Assembly: GCA_002269645.1 (NCBI GenBank)
Contig: NIVC01003320.1
Span: 1-46,303, forward strand
Length of the DNA stretch: 46,303 nucleotides
Direction: 5' to 3'
DNA from: Macrostomum lignano
Taxonomy: Eukaryota
Positions 18,777 to 42,236 of this stretch are shown here, piece by piece. The position numbers and the translations under genes were made by a program. A model generated the notes under the pieces. The model was given only the letters and a program-made list of their open reading frames with translations. It was not told where the DNA came from and ran no database searches. The number at the start of each line of letters is the position of its first letter. Within the stretch, counting starts at the first letter, position 1.

Positions 18777-21700
18777 ATGAGCCGAGAGTCTCATCTATTG
18801 CCGCTGTTGCTAACTCTGTTGCTGATTTTAATTTTCACCTGCCAATCGGTCGCTGCCTTGAAAATCTATCGAAGTCGGCAAGAATTCATCTCAATGCTGG
18901 GCCAAACAGAAGGTAAGAGAGATCTATTCGTTTCGCTAATTGTATTCAGCAATTTCCACATGTTACCATGTGATTTTCGATATTTTCAATGTCATAAAAT
19001 ATTCGTAATTACGAGTATATGAAACTTTTGTTTTACGGAGCGTTGCAGCAGTCAATACAGCAATAAAACATAAAGCACGCTGAACCAGATAAAATCAGCT
19101 CTTTTGCTTCCAATTAAATTAAAAAATTATCGCCATTTTAATCCCGTCATTCGCAGAAAATCTGCCCGATTAAAAAGATGTCTTCAATCCTATGTTTGAC
19201 CAATTTGAGGGGCCATCTCTAATTACAGGCATCGTAAATGAAAGTAAAAAAGTTATAAGGATCTTGTTCTACAAATTGTTGTCTGATATAACTTCTGGTT
19301 TTTTATTTTCAGGGTATTTCGTTTCTTTACACACGCCACCCCCCTCACTTTCGTTTCACGATGCATATTAACAAATTCTCCATTTAGGGTATCGTATAAC
19401 GAAAGTGAATATAAAGAATTTTTAGAATTTTGGTATCCTTAAACGAAAGAATGCCCTTAAGCCGTCCTTGTGCCGTGTGGGGAGCCGCGCTCACACGGGT
19501 GATGCGGACTCTCAGCTGGAGTGCGCAACGGCTCTTACAAGTCGGGGACGTCAGATAAATGTTAGATATGTACTTTTACATTGCACCGACATATGACGTC
19601 GTTTCCGTCGATGTAATTTAAAAGTACATATTTGTCAGCGACGTCGATAGAGTTTTTAATTTTTCCGATTTTGCAAAATCTAGAAACCTTGAACTACATT
19701 ATGTTTATCATTATCAATCTATGCAAATTGAAAAAGACACTTTCTTATGTTGTCATGCCGAACAGACAACAGAGATCAAAGAAGAGGTCTCAAATTATAA
19801 CACTGACCCTGCTTGAACCCGTTCAGGCCGATTGTACCTTGGCAACTGTGAGCAGAGCACTAGACGGTTCACCTGCATCTACGCCATAGACGAGAGCTAC
19901 AGTCAAGAGCCAACCCAGTGCGCCGTGACAGAACAGCAGCACAAGCCCTGGTGGATGGGCATCCTCGAGACGCCGGCCTACATATCCAAGATCACGGTGC
20001 TCAATATCGACCAGACCTATCGATCTTATCCGGATGCACTTCGAGGAATCACCATCATGGCGGGCGACGACATCTGCTTTCGCTTCGAGAGTGACGAGTC
20101 CTTTATAAAACGTTCGTTTCCTTGCGACGTCATTGCGGACCAGATCACCATCCAGAGCAACAGAGACAACGCCGTGTTGACGTTATGCGACATTGAAGTA
20201 TTTGGTGCGCCAGTAAAATTTCCAGCCATTCTTAAGGACCCTTAGTAAGCATGACGTGTACATATTTCAATCTTTAAAGCACGCTGTATATCATCCATGA
20301 TACGACAAGTACTAACTATTTTATTATTGAATAATAATATAATAACACTAGGTACTAAAAAAGTTTTTTGTCTAAAGCTAGACAGATAGACAGACAGACA
20401 GACAGACAGACAGACAGACAGACAGACAGACACACAGACAGACAGACAGACAGACACACAGACAGACAGACAGACAGACAGACAGACAGACAGACAGACA
20501 GACAGACAGACAGACAGACAGACAGACACAAAGACAGACAGACAGACAGACAGACAGACAGACAGACAGACAGACAGACAGACAGACAGACAGACAGACA
20601 GACAGACAGACAGACACACAGACAGACAGACAGACAGACAGACAGACAGACACAAAGACAGACAGACACATAGACAGACAGACACACAGACAGACAGACA
20701 GACAGACAGACAGACAGACAGACAGACAGACAGACAGACAGACAGACAGACAGACAGACAGACAGACAGACAGACAGACAGACAGACAGACAGACAGAGA
20801 GACAGACAGACAACAGACAGACAGACAGACAGACAGACAGACAGATAGACAGACAGATAGACAGACAGACAGACAGATAAACAGACAGACAGATAGACAG
20901 ACAGACACTAAGACAGACAGACAGACAGACAGACAGACAGACAGACAGACAGACACAAAGACAGACAGACAGACAGACAGACAGACAGATAGACAGACAG
21001 ACAGACAGACAGACAGACAACTAATTGCATTGCATATTTGGCTTTCTTTGCAGCGCTTTGCTAGTTCATTCCTGCCAGCAGAGCAGTGTTGGCGGCAATG
21101 GATATTGCCAGAATGCATTCGACGGCAACGCACAAGGCGACCACAATGCGAATCCTTGCGCAATGACCTCCGATGAATTTACACCCTGGTTGGAGGCCAA
21201 ACTTTGGACTCCATCTCTGGTCACTGAAGTCAGAGTTTACAACCGGCTAGACTGCTGCAAAGACAGCCTCACTAACATCACTGTGACACTCAACAATCGA
21301 GTCTGCTCATCATATGACGGCGAACCAGAAGATGCAATGAGTTTTGATTGCAAGTTCTTTGGCGATCGAGTGCGCATCAAAAGCAAGAAAAATCAAGCCA
21401 TTTCAATCTGTGAGCTTCAAATAATTGGCTACCCCATGGAGTTTCCAAATGTCGAGAAATTCAGTAAGTTAGTATTCATTATCGATGTACGAAATCACCT
21501 AAAAGAAAAGCAAGGATGAAGTCGTGGTCTTTTTTATATATTTGCCAGCTACATGTGGTACGCAAATCAGCGACTCTCATTTGCTAGGCCAGCCTCCAAG
21601 ATCCTTAGTTGTTGGGCCAGCCTCCCAGATCCTCAGTTGCTGGGCCAGCCTCCCAGATCCTCAGTTGCTGGGCCAGCCTCCCAGATCCTCAGTTGCTGGG

Positions 21701-39526: not shown

Positions 39527-42236
39527 ATGAGCAGAATGTCTCAACCATGGGTTTCACACTTGTTGCTAACAGTGCTGCTTCTCCTATGCCGATACGCCAG
39601 CGCCGTTAAACTCCACAAACCTCGGTCAGAAGTTCTCTCACTACTGGGCGAACAAGAAGGTAAGACAATTCTTATTTACCGTATTTGTGGTGCTGTTTTG
39701 ACACGAAAGAATTGATAAACTTGGCTGATATTCAGATGAAACTCTTGCCCAAGCCCTAACCCTTTATTGGAGATTGGGTTAGTAAATTCAACACCTGTTC
39801 AAGCATTCTCCTCACTCTAAAATCTCGCATTCCCTTGTCACTAAATTACTTAAAATACTGGCTTAAATTTACATTGAGACATGTTTATGCTACAATATTC
39901 TTAAACTATAGCATAAGCAGCAATAAAAACGCTCTTAAAAGTTAAAACCATAAATTTATCATACTATGTCCAAGACTAAACATTGTCAAAACGTCATTAG
40001 TTCAGTTTCCAGAGGATATGACCACTTCAGAGATAGGAAATTTATTTAAATGCTGAATTTCTTGTATTATATTTACATAATTTTTAAGTACATGCTTACT
40101 TCTTGCTAACAGTAAAACTATATAGTTAGCTACGTACTACAAGCTCGAAATTTAGCATTGTCAGTGGCGAAAACGACTAATAAGCCTTCCGACGATATTT
40201 GACATTTAAAGCTTTTAAAAGCCCCGAAAAAAACATGAAAAATCTCGCCACTACATTTCCTTCCATCCACTCGAATCCGCATCAGGCCGACTGTACTTTG
40301 GCAACTGCGAGCAGAGCAGTGGACGGTCTTCGTGCGTCTTCGCCATAGACGAGAGCTACAATCAGGAGCCAACCCAGTGCGCCGTGACATCTCTGGAAGG
40401 CAAGCCCTGGTGGATGGGCGTCCTCGAGACGCCGGCGTATATAACTAAGATAACGCTGCTCAATATCGATCAGCTGTATCGTTCTCACCCGGACGCCCTT
40501 CGCGCAGTAACCATTATGGCAGGTGATGACGTCTGCTTCCGCTACGAAAGCGACGAGTCTTTTGTTAAGCGTTCGTTTCCTTGCGACACCGTTGCGGACC
40601 AGATCGTCATCAGGAGCAGAATGGATTCAGCGGCTTTGACTCTGTGCGATGTCACAGTTTATGGCGCGCCAATTAGATTTCGGGGAGTTGTTGACGATGC
40701 TGGGTGAGCATTTAACTGACAAAATCAATACTTCTGTGTAAAGAAACTTTTTGCCCTGAGAAAAACGAAAGAAGGAAATAAAGACGGTAATAAATAGCCA
40801 GAAAAGATTTATTTAAATGAACAAAAAACTGACATCAGGTGAGACAACTAAGAACAATCAGGATGGATAGTGAGATCGAAACTAATAAACAGACAGACAG
40901 ACAGACAGACAGACAGACAGACAGACAGACAGACAGACAGACAGACAGACAGACAGACAGACAGACAGACAGACAGACAGACCGTCAGAGATAGACAGAC
41001 AGACAGACAGACAGACAGACAGACAGACAGACAGACAGACAGACAGACAGACAGACAGACAGACAGACAGACACACACACAGACAGACAGACAGACAGAC
41101 AGACAGACAGACAGACAGACAGACAGACAGACACACACACAGACAGACAGACAGACAGACAGACAGACAGACAGACAGACAGACAGACACTAAGACAGAC
41201 AACTCATTCCATAGCCATACGCTTTCCCGGCAGCCCTTTGCGAGTTCAGTGGTGCCAGCAGAGCAGTGTAAGCGGCAACGGCTACTGCGAGAACGCATTC
41301 GATGGCGATGCAAACAGCAACCACAATGCGCGTCCTTGTGCAGTCACCATAGACGAAGCAACGCCCTGGATGTCAGCCAGACTGGAAATTCCCTCTCTGG
41401 TGACTGAAATCAAAATTTTCAACCGAGCCGACTGTTGCGGCGATGGACTCAACCAATTTTTGCTGACACTTGATAATCGAGTCTGCGCGGATTACGAAGG
41501 TGCAACGTTCGAGTCGAAGTATTTCCCATGCAAGTTTTTCGGCGATCGGCTGCGCATTAAAAGCAAGAAAAATAGAGCCATTTCAGTCTGCGAGATGCAG
41601 GTCCTTGGCTACCCTATGGAACTTCCGCGAGATGCGAAATTCAGTAAGTTAGGATTCAAAGAAGATAATGGGAAGTTAATCTCTAATAGTTCTCACAAAA
41701 AATTCACAAGAAAAACGTGTCTGCTCTATCCCACTGCTAACAAAGTGCCACTCCTCCCAGATTCTCATTTACTGGGCCAGCCTCCCAGATCCTCAGTTGC
41801 TGGACCAGCCTCCCAGATCCTCAGTTGCTGGGCCAGCCAGCCTCCCAAATCCTCAGTCACTGGGCCAGCCTCCCAGCTCCTCAGTTGCTGAGGCCGGATT
41901 CTCAGATCCTCAGTTGCCAGCGATCCCAAATGCGCAACCAATATCTGTCTTTATCACAATGCAGAGGCCCTCGGCTGCTACAAAGATAACCACAAGGACC
42001 GTGACCTCGGTCAGCTGGTGTCCAGCATCCTCATGAGCCACGAGAAGTGCTATTCGATTTGCAAGCGACTTGGCCTGAAATATTTCGGCGTCCAAGGCGG
42101 AGCGCACTGCTGGGGCGGATCGACCTACGGCAAGCACGGCAAGGTTGACGAAAAAAAGTGTTCCATACCCTGCGAGGACAACGAGAGGCAGAGATGCGGT
42201 GGTTCAATATTCAACAATATTTTCGAGGTCCTATGA
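39527..42236 (+). CDS. Secreted lectin-like protein C (SP-FTL-FTL-WSC), 410 aa
   Basis: join(39527..39659,40286..40703,41234..41643,41965..42236) = 1233 nt. Exon sizes and phases are identical to B. Confidence 0.9.
40889..41200. repeat. (GACA)n microsatellite, intron 2 of lectin C
   Basis: Seen directly in the sequence. Confidence 0.99.
41753..41920. repeat. 28-bp minisatellite, about 5-6 degenerate copies, intron 3 of lectin C
   Basis: Same unit family as in A and B. Confidence 0.88.

What the first reader, a model, noticed from the sequence alone, without database searches (positions are those of the whole stretch)
18777..42236. Tandem family of secreted FTL-FTL-WSC proteins with a dismantled fucose-binding triad
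Seen: three intact 4-exon paralogues with one domain per exon. Known: F-type lectins bind fucose through H-X26-R-X-D-X4-R/K. Here the X26 spacing is exact, but domain 2 reads M/V-X26-R-X-D-CC-X2-S/G (His and the last Arg lost; RxD and vicinal CC kept), and domain 1 has V-X26-I (triad lost). WSC is a separate putative glycan-binding module. Inference: a lineage-specific secreted recognition family (immune, mucus/adhesive or seminal) with a non-fucose ligand or protein partner. This is the best candidate for an undescribed system in the window.
Basis: partly seen in the sequence, partly recalled or inferred. Interest (0 to 1): 0.75.

Follow-up and report, generated by a model that had tools for sequence, protein, structure and literature searches.

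The report
Flatworm lectin-like genes lacking fucose-binding residues
Three neighbouring genes of the flatworm Macrostomum lignano encode secreted proteins made of two F-type-lectin domains that have lost their fucose-binding residues plus one WSC sugar-binding domain; they are real, transcribed and conserved, but they are an already-annotated, lineage-specific offshoot of a known lectin family whose job is still unknown.

Summary
The window is a whole 46.3-kb contig of Macrostomum lignano (assembly Mlig_3_7). It carries three intact, same-strand, 4-exon genes: signal peptide, FTL domain 1, FTL domain 2 and WSC, one per exon. My gene models match GenBank PAA51997-51999 letter for letter; these are RNA-seq-derived and named only 'hypothetical / WSC domain-containing'. 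Both FTL domains are true F-type lectin folds: FBP32 (3CQO) scores E 2e-18 by sequence and 4e-18 by Foldseek, and a domain-1 profile scores E 3e-17.

New here: the three genes are one subfamily of a larger M. lignano clade of at least five FTL-FTL-WSC subfamilies. All share the same degenerate sites. N-R-x-D-C-C in domain 2 is invariant, while the former His and last Arg positions vary freely. Canonical-triad FTL-WSC proteins exist in the same genome. The genes are under purifying selection (dN/dS 0.03-0.5), and the three-gene set is intact on two further contigs.

The compact architecture was found only in M. lignano. No expression site or ligand could be established, and a link to the WSC-rich prostate/seminal-fluid gene set was not supported. 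Verdict: a new variant of a known kind, of modest interest.

The parts
18777..18912 (+). c1 (Mlig017986.g1, PAA51997.1) exon 1: start codon, signal-like hydrophobic peptide, short linker; ends in phase 1
19827..20244 (+). c1 exon 2: FTL domain 1 (triad fully lost: V-x26-I-D-Q)
21054..21463 (+). c1 exon 3: FTL domain 2 (M-x26-R-L-D-CC-KD-S)
22570..22841 (+). c1 exon 4: WSC domain with 8 Cys, and stop codon
20380..21019 (.). (AGAC)n microsatellite in intron 2 of c1. The same repeat sits in intron 2 of c2 (30215-30910) and of c3 (40889-41201)
21576..22533 (.). 28-nt minisatellite (about 34 copies) in intron 3 of c1. Related arrays lie in intron 3 of c2 (31460-31847) and of c3 (41753-41917)
28465..28597 (+). 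c2 (Mlig015746.g2, PAA51998.1) exon 1: signal peptide (…RYASA|VK)
29618..30035 (+). c2 exon 2: FTL domain 1
30942..31351 (+). c2 exon 3: FTL domain 2 (V-x26-R-A-D-CC-GD-G)
32245..36995 (-). Ty3/gypsy-type LTR retroelement inserted in intron 3 of c2. The gag, protease, RT, RNase H and integrase pieces lie in several separate reading frames
37996..38267 (+). c2 exon 4: WSC domain with 7 Cys (HCWCG changed to HCWGG), and stop codon
39527..39659 (+). c3 (Mlig032348.g4, PAA51999.1) exon 1: signal peptide
40286..40703 (+). c3 exon 2: FTL domain 1
41234..41643 (+). c3 exon 3: FTL domain 2
41965..42236 (+). c3 exon 4: WSC domain (7 Cys), and stop codon

Best explanation
The three genes are transcribed, selectively maintained members of a Macrostomum-lineage clade of small secreted proteins. 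Each consists of a signal peptide, two F-type-lectin (FTL) beta-sandwich domains and one WSC domain.

Shown:
- Both FTL domains are genuine F-type lectin folds.
- In the common ancestor of at least five M. lignano subfamilies, domain 1 lost the whole His/Arg/Arg fucose site and the vicinal disulfide.
- Domain 2 lost the His and the second Arg but kept an invariant N-R-x-D-C-C.
- The genes evolve under purifying selection and are kept intact in every copy of the cluster found in the assembly.

Inferred:
- The proteins no longer bind L-fucose in the canonical way.
- The retained R-x-D-CC of domain 2 is kept mainly for loop and fold architecture. The reason is that the two former ligand-contact positions vary freely between subfamilies.
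- The WSC domain is the most constrained module together with domain 1, and is complete in c1. It supplies the carbohydrate or matrix anchor.
- The two ex-lectin domains act as altered-specificity or protein-binding surfaces.
- The protein would therefore work as a soluble extracellular bridging or recognition factor in a secretion (gland product, mucus, gut or reproductive fluid).

The tissue and the ligand remain unknown.
For: - Gene models and identity with RNA-seq-derived GenBank proteins.
- N-terminal hydrophobic segment only, no other transmembrane-like segment.
- WSC match to Pfam, E 5e-19.
- FTL homology: phmmer against the PDB gives FBP32 2.4e-18, AAA 2.5e-6 and SpX. The domain-1 profile gives FBP32 2.8e-17.
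- Structure: AF2 model pLDDT 79. Foldseek top hit is 3CQO at E 3.9e-18 over 298 columns. Single-domain TM-scores normalised to the target are 0.67-0.78 against 1K12, 2J22 and 2J1T.
- Triad table across paralogues and outgroups.
- Domain tree: the degenerate domain-1 sequences form one clade (99/97). The degenerate clade separates from the canonical M. lignano, amphioxus and hemichordate FTLs.
- dN/dS is 0.27-0.32 between paralogues and 0.03-0.48 between copies of the same gene on different contigs. By domain for c1 vs c2: D1 0.21, D2 0.34, WSC 0.21.
- Cluster order is conserved on contigs C295 and C3106.
Against: - No binding, expression or localisation data for these genes could be found.
- The signal peptide was judged by hydrophobicity and an AxA-like site, not by a trained predictor.
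- Loss of fucose binding is inferred from motif loss. That the triad is essential rests on published mutagenesis of other FTLs, which I recall from memory and did not test here.
- Invariance of R-x-D-CC could instead mean that a modified sugar site is still in use.
- c2 and c3 have lost one of the eight WSC cysteines, so WSC may not be the conserved active module in all members.
Confidence: 0.55

Rival explanations
1. They are seminal-fluid or prostate-gland proteins. M. lignano prostate-limited transcripts are strikingly rich in WSC-domain proteins, so the FTL-FTL-WSC genes would be further ejaculate components acting on the partner or on sperm.
For: - Many of the 76 prostate-limited transcripts have WSC-type best hits (Weber 2018, PMC5977470, Table S1).
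- Mlig-pro46 and 'several other SFP candidates' resemble WSCD2 (PMC6953679).
- RNA815_80.4 has two WSC domains and is needed for staining of the prostate glands by a prostate-gland antibody (PMC4490696).
- From memory: FTL repeats occur in a gamete-recognition protein, oyster bindin.
Against: - None of the gene ids given for 18 prostate candidates match Mlig017986, 015746, 032348, 006374 or 029629.
- No entry of Table S1 part 1 has a lectin or fucolectin hit. None combines a transcript length of about 1.3 kb or more with a single-WSC hit.
- The primers of Mlig-pro46 and Mlig-pro4 map to contigs C40, C841, C2114 and C2255. None of these is an FTL-FTL-WSC locus or one of the closest WSC relatives.
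- dN/dS is well below 1, unlike the rapid evolution expected of many seminal-fluid proteins.
Confidence: 0.15
2. They are innate-immune or digestive pattern-recognition lectins. WSC would bind beta-glucan-, chitin- or xylan-type polysaccharides of microbes or of the diatom food. The modified FTL domains would recognise a non-fucose sugar.
For: - All three modules belong to carbohydrate-binding families.
- Tandem expansion with diversification of the former contact residues is typical of recognition families.
- Domain 2 has the highest dN/dS.
- From memory: fungal WSC domains bind beta-1,3-glucan, xylan and chitin, and many animal FTLs are immune lectins.
Against: - There are no expression or binding data.
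- The variable pocket residues show no sign of positive selection (omega below 1).
- Domain 1 has no recognisable sugar site at all yet is strongly conserved, which fits a protein-binding or structural role better.
Confidence: 0.2
3. Domain 2 still binds fucose or a close analogue through a non-canonical site, using the retained Arg, Asp and vicinal disulfide plus compensating residues.
For: - N-R-x-D-C-C is invariant across all degenerate subfamilies.
- The A-F-D-G-N segment that aligns with the corresponding stretch of FBP32 is kept in domain 2. Its role as the cation site I recall from memory.
Against: - The His and second-Arg positions are not replaced by a conserved alternative. They read M/V/Y/M/L/D and S/G/Q/D/L/S, which argues against a shared binding chemistry.
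- Canonical-triad paralogues persist in the same genome, so fucose binding is covered elsewhere.
Confidence: 0.08
4. They are decaying duplicates (pseudogenes in the making) of canonical FTL-WSC genes, with no function of their own.
For: - Loss of the binding residues.
- c2 carries a 5-kb retroelement in an intron, has lost a WSC cysteine, and has a somewhat higher omega (0.4-0.5).
Against: - All nine copies examined have intact reading frames and conserved splice sites.
- dN/dS is 0.03-0.3 for c1 and c3.
- The degenerate state is shared by subfamilies only 35-39% identical, so it has been maintained for a long time.
- The GenBank models derive from transcripts.
Confidence: 0.02

Closest known systems
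MsaFBP32, the binary tandem F-type lectin of striped bass serum (PDB 3CQO)
   Same: Secreted protein with two tandem FTL domains. It is the best sequence hit (E 2.4e-18) and the best structural hit (E 3.9e-18 over 298 columns). The domain-1 profile also hits it (E 2.8e-17).
   Different: In the printed alignments its N-domain shows the full motif (C-T-H-T … N-R-G-D-CC-PE-R). Its C-domain keeps His and Arg but lacks the vicinal CC. It has no WSC domain. It is a fucolectin per the PDB title; the window proteins lack His and the second Arg in domain 2 and the entire site in domain 1.
Anguilla anguilla agglutinin (PDB 1K12) and bacterial FTL modules (SpX 2J1R/2J22, lectinolysin 3LE0)
   Same: Same beta-jelly-roll fold. 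TM-scores normalised to the target are 0.67-0.78 and sequence E-values are 1e-6 to 3e-4.
   Different: They are single-domain fucose-binding modules; the PDB entries include fucose and Lewis-antigen complexes.
Canonical FTL-WSC proteins of M. lignano itself, for example Mlig031442 (P0198, FTL-FTL-FTL-WSC), P0004 and P0025
   Same: Same genome, same domain types, WSC at the C-terminus, about 28% identity.
   Different: All their FTL domains keep H / R-x-D / CC / R. They form a separate clade in the domain tree. Several appear as single open frames without the window genes' introns.
Sister subfamilies of the degenerate clade: Mlig024563 (P0012), Mlig006795 (P0009), Mlig025061 (P0010), A0A1I8JJQ1 (P0020)
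   Same: Same signal peptide plus FTL-FTL-WSC layout at about 400-465 aa, and the same pattern of triad loss. Identity is 35-39%.
   Different: Different residues at the former contact positions. P0009 keeps the His in domain 1. P0010 and P0020 have a one-residue insertion (R-M-D-K-CC).
WSC domains of Kremen1 (PDB 5FWW) and of a 118-residue chain with an uninformative depositor name (PDB 7PZ2)
   Same: The WSC domain of c1 aligns over its full length, E 2e-7 and 6e-5.
   Different: Kremen is a membrane receptor with kringle and CUB domains. No known WSC protein of this kind carries FTL domains.
FTL+WSC proteins of deuterostomes: amphioxus XP_078580859, hemichordate Glandiceps XP_077989192
   Same: FTL and WSC domains occur in one polypeptide.
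   Different: They are giant or multi-repeat proteins (W8F5 at 5602 aa; WFFFFF at 862 aa) with WSC at the N-terminal side and canonical triads.

Membership tests
F-type lectin (FTL / FTP domain) family | F-type lectin beta-jelly-roll fold and detectable sequence homology | tested here: met
   Domain 2: phmmer gives FBP32 2.4e-18 and AAA 2.5e-6. Domain 1: profile gives FBP32 2.8e-17. The AF2 model's best Foldseek hit is 3CQO, with 1K12 and 2J22 at target TM 0.67-0.76.
F-type lectin (FTL / FTP domain) family | Fucose-binding sequence motif H-x26-R-x-D-x4-R/K | tested here: not met
   Domain 2 reads M/V … R-x-D-CC-xx-S/G. Domain 1 reads V … I-D-Q. This holds in all three genes and in all sister subfamilies.
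F-type lectin (FTL / FTP domain) family | Vicinal disulfide (CC) next to R-x-D | tested here: met
   Present and invariant in domain 2. Absent in domain 1.
F-type lectin (FTL / FTP domain) family | Binding of L-fucose or fucosylated glycans | not testable with these tools
   Needs recombinant protein with a glycan array or ITC.
WSC domain family (Pfam PF01822) | Match to the Pfam model above the gathering score | tested here: met
   68.7, 61.0 and 61.0 bits against a cut-off of 27.8.
WSC domain family (Pfam PF01822) | Eight conserved cysteines | tested here: inconclusive
   c1 has 8. c2 and c3, and their copies on other contigs, have 7 (HCWCG changed to HCWGG).
WSC domain family (Pfam PF01822) | Carbohydrate binding | not testable with these tools
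M. lignano prostate-limited seminal-fluid candidates (Weber 2018; Patlar 2019) | Gene or transcript is on the published candidate list | tested here: not met
   The ids of the 18 RNAi-tested candidates do not include the window's genes or their copies elsewhere in the assembly. Table S1 has no lectin or fucolectin-type hit. The remaining candidates are listed only by old transcript ids without sequence, so the test is incomplete.
M. lignano prostate-limited seminal-fluid candidates (Weber 2018; Patlar 2019) | Prostate-limited expression by in situ hybridisation | not testable with these tools
   No expression data were reachable.
Secreted soluble protein | N-terminal signal peptide, and no other membrane anchor | tested here: met
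   The only hydrophobic 19-mer windows start at residues 2-14. An AxA-like site follows (…SVAA|L, …ASA|V). This is a heuristic, not a trained predictor.

The most novel reading that the evidence does not exclude
The degenerate FTL-FTL-WSC clade would be a Macrostomum-specific family of 'ex-lectins'. The F-type lectin fold would have been converted from a fucose binder into a protein- or new-glycan-recognition module. Each subfamily would have its own specificity, given the free variation at the former contact residues. The proteins would be used in a lineage-specific secretion, for example partner manipulation through the ejaculate, egg or cement material, or capture and recognition of diatom polysaccharides.
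Probability: 0.2. Interest if true: 0.55.

Novelty: new variant of a known kind. Interest (0 to 1): 0.3.

Why it matters
If the ex-lectin domains have acquired a new ligand, the family would show how the F-type lectin scaffold is re-used after losing its defining sugar site. The system is experimentally tractable: M. lignano allows RNAi, in situ hybridisation and transgenesis. The same genome also contains canonical-triad relatives that can serve as internal controls.

For genome annotation, it shows that 'WSC domain-containing protein' hides two FTL domains that Pfam barely detects or misses. Otherwise this is an ordinary lineage-specific expansion of secreted lectin-like genes in a recently polyploid genome.

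Tried and rejected
1. Expression or function from the literature.
- Full-text search for the gene ids found nothing.
- Supplement searches of Grudniewska 2018, Brand 2020 and Mouton 2018 found nothing.
- Searches for 'F-type lectin'+'WSC domain', Macrostomum+'F-type lectin' and Macrostomum+fucolectin gave nothing relevant.
- Main-text searches of four further M. lignano papers were negative.

2. Link to prostate or seminal-fluid WSC genes.
- The ids of 18 candidates do not match.
- Primers of Mlig-pro46 and Mlig-pro4 map to other contigs.
- I therefore kept this reading only as a low-probability rival.

3. Direct transcript evidence from public run assemblies.
- I relied instead on the RNA-seq origin of the GenBank models.

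4. Orthologues outside M. lignano.
- Word-indexed searches with c1, with a family profile and with the canonical paralogue P0198, plus the exhaustive representative search, found no other compact FTL-FTL-WSC protein.
- The only non-Macrostomum FTL+WSC proteins have other layouts.
- Other Macrostomum species are probably not represented in these databases, so 'genus-specific' versus 'species-specific' is open.

5. Pseudogene reading: rejected on dN/dS and intactness.

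
Full report
**What the window is.** The sequence is eukaryotic: it has introns, microsatellites and LTR retroelements. The copy-1 protein found a 94% (BLASTP; 99% in the aligned region) identical UniRef entry of the flatworm Macrostomum lignano. The window's own assembly, G000, has 764 Mb in 5269 contigs, and the window is the whole of contig C3320. This is the published Mlig_3_7 assembly (PMC5730564).

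**Check of the observation.** I built the three gene models by hand from reading frames, GT-AG sites and intron phase.
- c1: 18777-18912, 19827-20244, 21054-21463, 22570-22841.
- c2: 28465-28597, 29618-30035, 30942-31351, 37996-38267.
- c3: 39527-39659, 40286-40703, 41234-41643, 41965-42236.

Exon lengths are 136 or 133, 418, 410 and 272 nt, and the intron phases are 1, 2, 1 in all three. The products of 411, 410 and 410 aa are letter for letter GenBank PAA51997.1 (BOX15_Mlig017986g1), PAA51998.1 (Mlig015746g2) and PAA51999.1 (Mlig032348g4), recorded on a 46303-bp contig.

The GenBank annotation of this assembly was made only from RNA-seq and transcriptome assemblies (StringTie/TACO plus a de novo transcriptome, with ORFs called by TransDecoder).

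Exon 1 holds the only hydrophobic stretch, an N-terminal signal-like peptide followed by an AxA-type site. Exon 4 is a WSC domain (PF01822, E 5e-19 to 1e-16). Exon 3 matches PF22633. This is the Pfam model that the canonical FTL proteins of this search also hit. The score is 31.5 bits for c1 and 25 bits for c2 and c3. Exon 2 is not recognised by Pfam.

**Are both domains F-type lectin domains?** Yes.
- phmmer of c1 against PDB sequences gives FBP32 (3CQO) 2.4e-18, AAA (1K12) 2.5e-6, and the pneumococcal SpX modules and lectinolysin. Kremen1 matches the WSC part.
- A profile of domain 1 from six family members hits FBP32 at 2.8e-17, and also AAA, lectinolysin and SpX.
- An AlphaFold2 model of c1, built with a 23-sequence family alignment, has mean pLDDT 79 and pTM 0.63.
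- Its best Foldseek match in the PDB is the two-domain FBP32 (E 3.9e-18, 298 aligned columns). Single-domain matches to 1K12, 2J22 and 2J1T have target-normalised TM 0.67-0.78.

**The motif.** In the HMMER alignment to FBP32, the His of C-T-H-T aligns with Met of c1. The R-G-D-CC-PE-R segment aligns with R-L-D-CC-KD-S. A regular-expression check shows the 26-residue spacing is exact in all three genes.

**What is new relative to the finding.**

1. The cluster is not unique. The same three genes, in the same order, lie on contigs C295 and C3106. A 100% identical copy of the c3 region lies on C5055. This fits the known redundancy and hidden polyploidy of this assembly.

2. The genome holds well over 100 FTL-domain exons, including tandem arrays, and many FTL+WSC genes.

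3. An exhaustive HMMER search of 1.84 billion representatives was followed by domain typing of the top 150 and name look-ups.
   - Compact FTL-FTL-WSC proteins of about 400-465 aa occur only in M. lignano.
   - Elsewhere the two domain types co-occur only in differently built proteins: an amphioxus giant (W8F5), a hemichordate protein (WFFFFF), a metagenomic protein, and one run-assembly contig with FTL, WSC and a further region.

4. A residue table of all these domains separates two kinds of M. lignano protein.
   - Canonical kind: Mlig031442 (FFFW), P0004 (WFWFWF), P0025, P0015 (FFF). These have H / R-x-D / CC / R in their domains, like the deuterostome proteins.
   - Degenerate kind: the window's genes plus Mlig024563, Mlig006795, Mlig025061 and A0A1I8JJQ1.
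   - In the degenerate clade, N-R-x-D-C-C of domain 2 is invariant. The former His position reads M, V, Y, M, L, D and the former last-Arg position reads S, G, Q, D, L, S.
   - Domain 1 has lost everything, except that Mlig006795 keeps the His.

5. In a maximum-likelihood tree of the domains, all degenerate domain-1 sequences form one clade (99/97). Degenerate D1 plus D2 separate from the canonical domains (87/85). The two-domain arrangement and the loss of the triad therefore predate the split of subfamilies that are now only 35-39% identical.

**Selection.** I used Nei-Gojobori estimates.
- c2 vs c3: dS 0.057, dN/dS 0.32.
- c1 vs c2: dS 0.83, dN/dS 0.27.
- Copies of the same gene on different contigs: 0.03-0.11 for c1 and c3, and 0.23-0.48 for c2.
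- By domain, c1 vs c2: D1 0.21, D2 0.34, WSC 0.21.

All nine copies examined are intact. The genes are therefore functional. The motif-less domain 1 is as constrained as WSC, and domain 2 is the least constrained.

**Interpretation.**

Shown: a lineage-specific, transcribed, constrained family of secreted-type proteins with two true FTL folds lacking the fucose triad and one WSC domain.

Inferred:
- Canonical fucose binding is lost. That the triad is required is established for other FTLs by structure and mutagenesis; this is my recollection and was not tested here.
- The invariant R-x-D-CC is probably kept for loop architecture, because the neighbouring ex-contact residues drift.
- WSC is the likeliest carbohydrate anchor.
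- The conserved domain 1 surface suggests a protein or novel-ligand interaction.

I therefore favour a soluble extracellular bridging or recognition protein (confidence about 0.55).

**The biological setting is open.** The seminal-fluid idea is attractive because M. lignano prostate-limited transcripts are rich in WSC proteins. Three checks did not support it. The ids given for the 18 RNAi-tested candidates do not include these genes. The BLAST table of the 76 candidates has no lectin-type hit. The primers of two WSC-type candidates map to unrelated contigs. Immune or digestive recognition is equally possible and untested.

**Comparison with what is known, and novelty.** The closest solved relative is the binary tandem fucolectin FBP32. 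The closest relatives overall are uncharacterised M. lignano paralogues. The proteins meet the fold criterion of the F-type lectin family but fail its defining binding motif. They should be called FTL-fold, lectin-like proteins rather than fucolectins.

No paper in the searchable library mentions this architecture or these genes. They are, however, already in GenBank and UniProt as hypothetical or 'WSC domain-containing' proteins.

Lectin domains with degenerate sites and lineage-specific tandem expansions are common, so a specialist would find this mildly interesting rather than surprising. I rate it a new variant of a known kind, interest about 0.3.

Noticed in passing
window 37996-38267 and 41965-42236 (WSC exons of c2 and c3): c2 and c3, and their copies on other contigs, have changed the conserved WSC motif HCWCG to HCWGG. 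The WSC domain then has 7 cysteines and the mature protein an odd number (21). This means a free thiol, possibly for disulfide-linked oligomers, or a lost disulfide. c1 and all sister subfamilies keep the Cys.
   Followed up: partly
window 11028-15840 (+): The upstream neighbour is a glutamine-rich gene with RPEL repeats (PF02755, E 7e-13) and a SAP domain (PF02037, E 2e-6), that is, a myocardin/MRTF-like transcription cofactor. Its introns hold a 23-nt x 48 minisatellite (13118-14223) and an (ATAG)196 microsatellite (14646-15428).
   Followed up: partly
window 237-8513 (-): A Ty3/gypsy-type LTR retroelement lies at the contig's left end: a weak gag-like hit, an RT domain (RVT_1, E 1e-23) and long further ORFs without Pfam hits.
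   Followed up: partly
window 32245-36995 (-), inside intron 3 of c2: A second gypsy-type retroelement enlarges intron 3 of c2 to about 6.6 kb. The gag, aspartyl protease, RT, RNase H and integrase domains are spread over several separate open frames, so the coding region is interrupted. The host gene's exons and splice sites are unaffected.
   Followed up: partly
window 20380-21019, 30215-30910, 40889-41201; and 21576-22533, 31460-31847, 41753-41917: All three paralogues carry an (ACAG/AGAC)n microsatellite in intron 2 and a related 28-32-nt minisatellite in intron 3. The duplications therefore copied whole genes with their introns, and the arrays have since changed length.
   Followed up: partly
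G000 contig C5055:4708-8969, versus window 37974-42236: Contig C5055 carries exons 100% identical to the last exon of c2 and all of c3. This is most likely assembly redundancy (a haplotig) rather than a further paralogue. C295 and C3106 carry diverged copies of the whole three-gene cluster (dS 0.01-0.05).
   Followed up: partly
G000 C34:226265-233002 and C31:148667-170047, C168:396080-410976: There are head-to-tail arrays of FTL-domain exons, with a period of about 1052 bp on C34. There are also apparently intronless FTL-FTL-WSC open frames, for example a 416-aa frame at C31:166469-167698. These are probably the canonical-triad relatives and show a very large FTL expansion in this genome.
   Followed up: no
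window 27305-27988 (-) and 23400-26650: Between c1 and c2 lie a 227-aa open frame with no Pfam hit and several proline/arginine-rich open frames, also without Pfam hits. By eye the first resembles the C-terminal part of a non-LTR retrotransposon reverse transcriptase (…LLYNAETWTL…). It is probably transposon debris.
   Followed up: partly
P0001 (UniRef A0A1I8G237) versus c1: The older UniProt/WormBase ParaSite model of this gene has a wrong N-terminus and skips the inter-domain linker. Several other entries of the family (P0196 at 1097 aa, P0193, P0197) look like fused or partial models.
   Followed up: no
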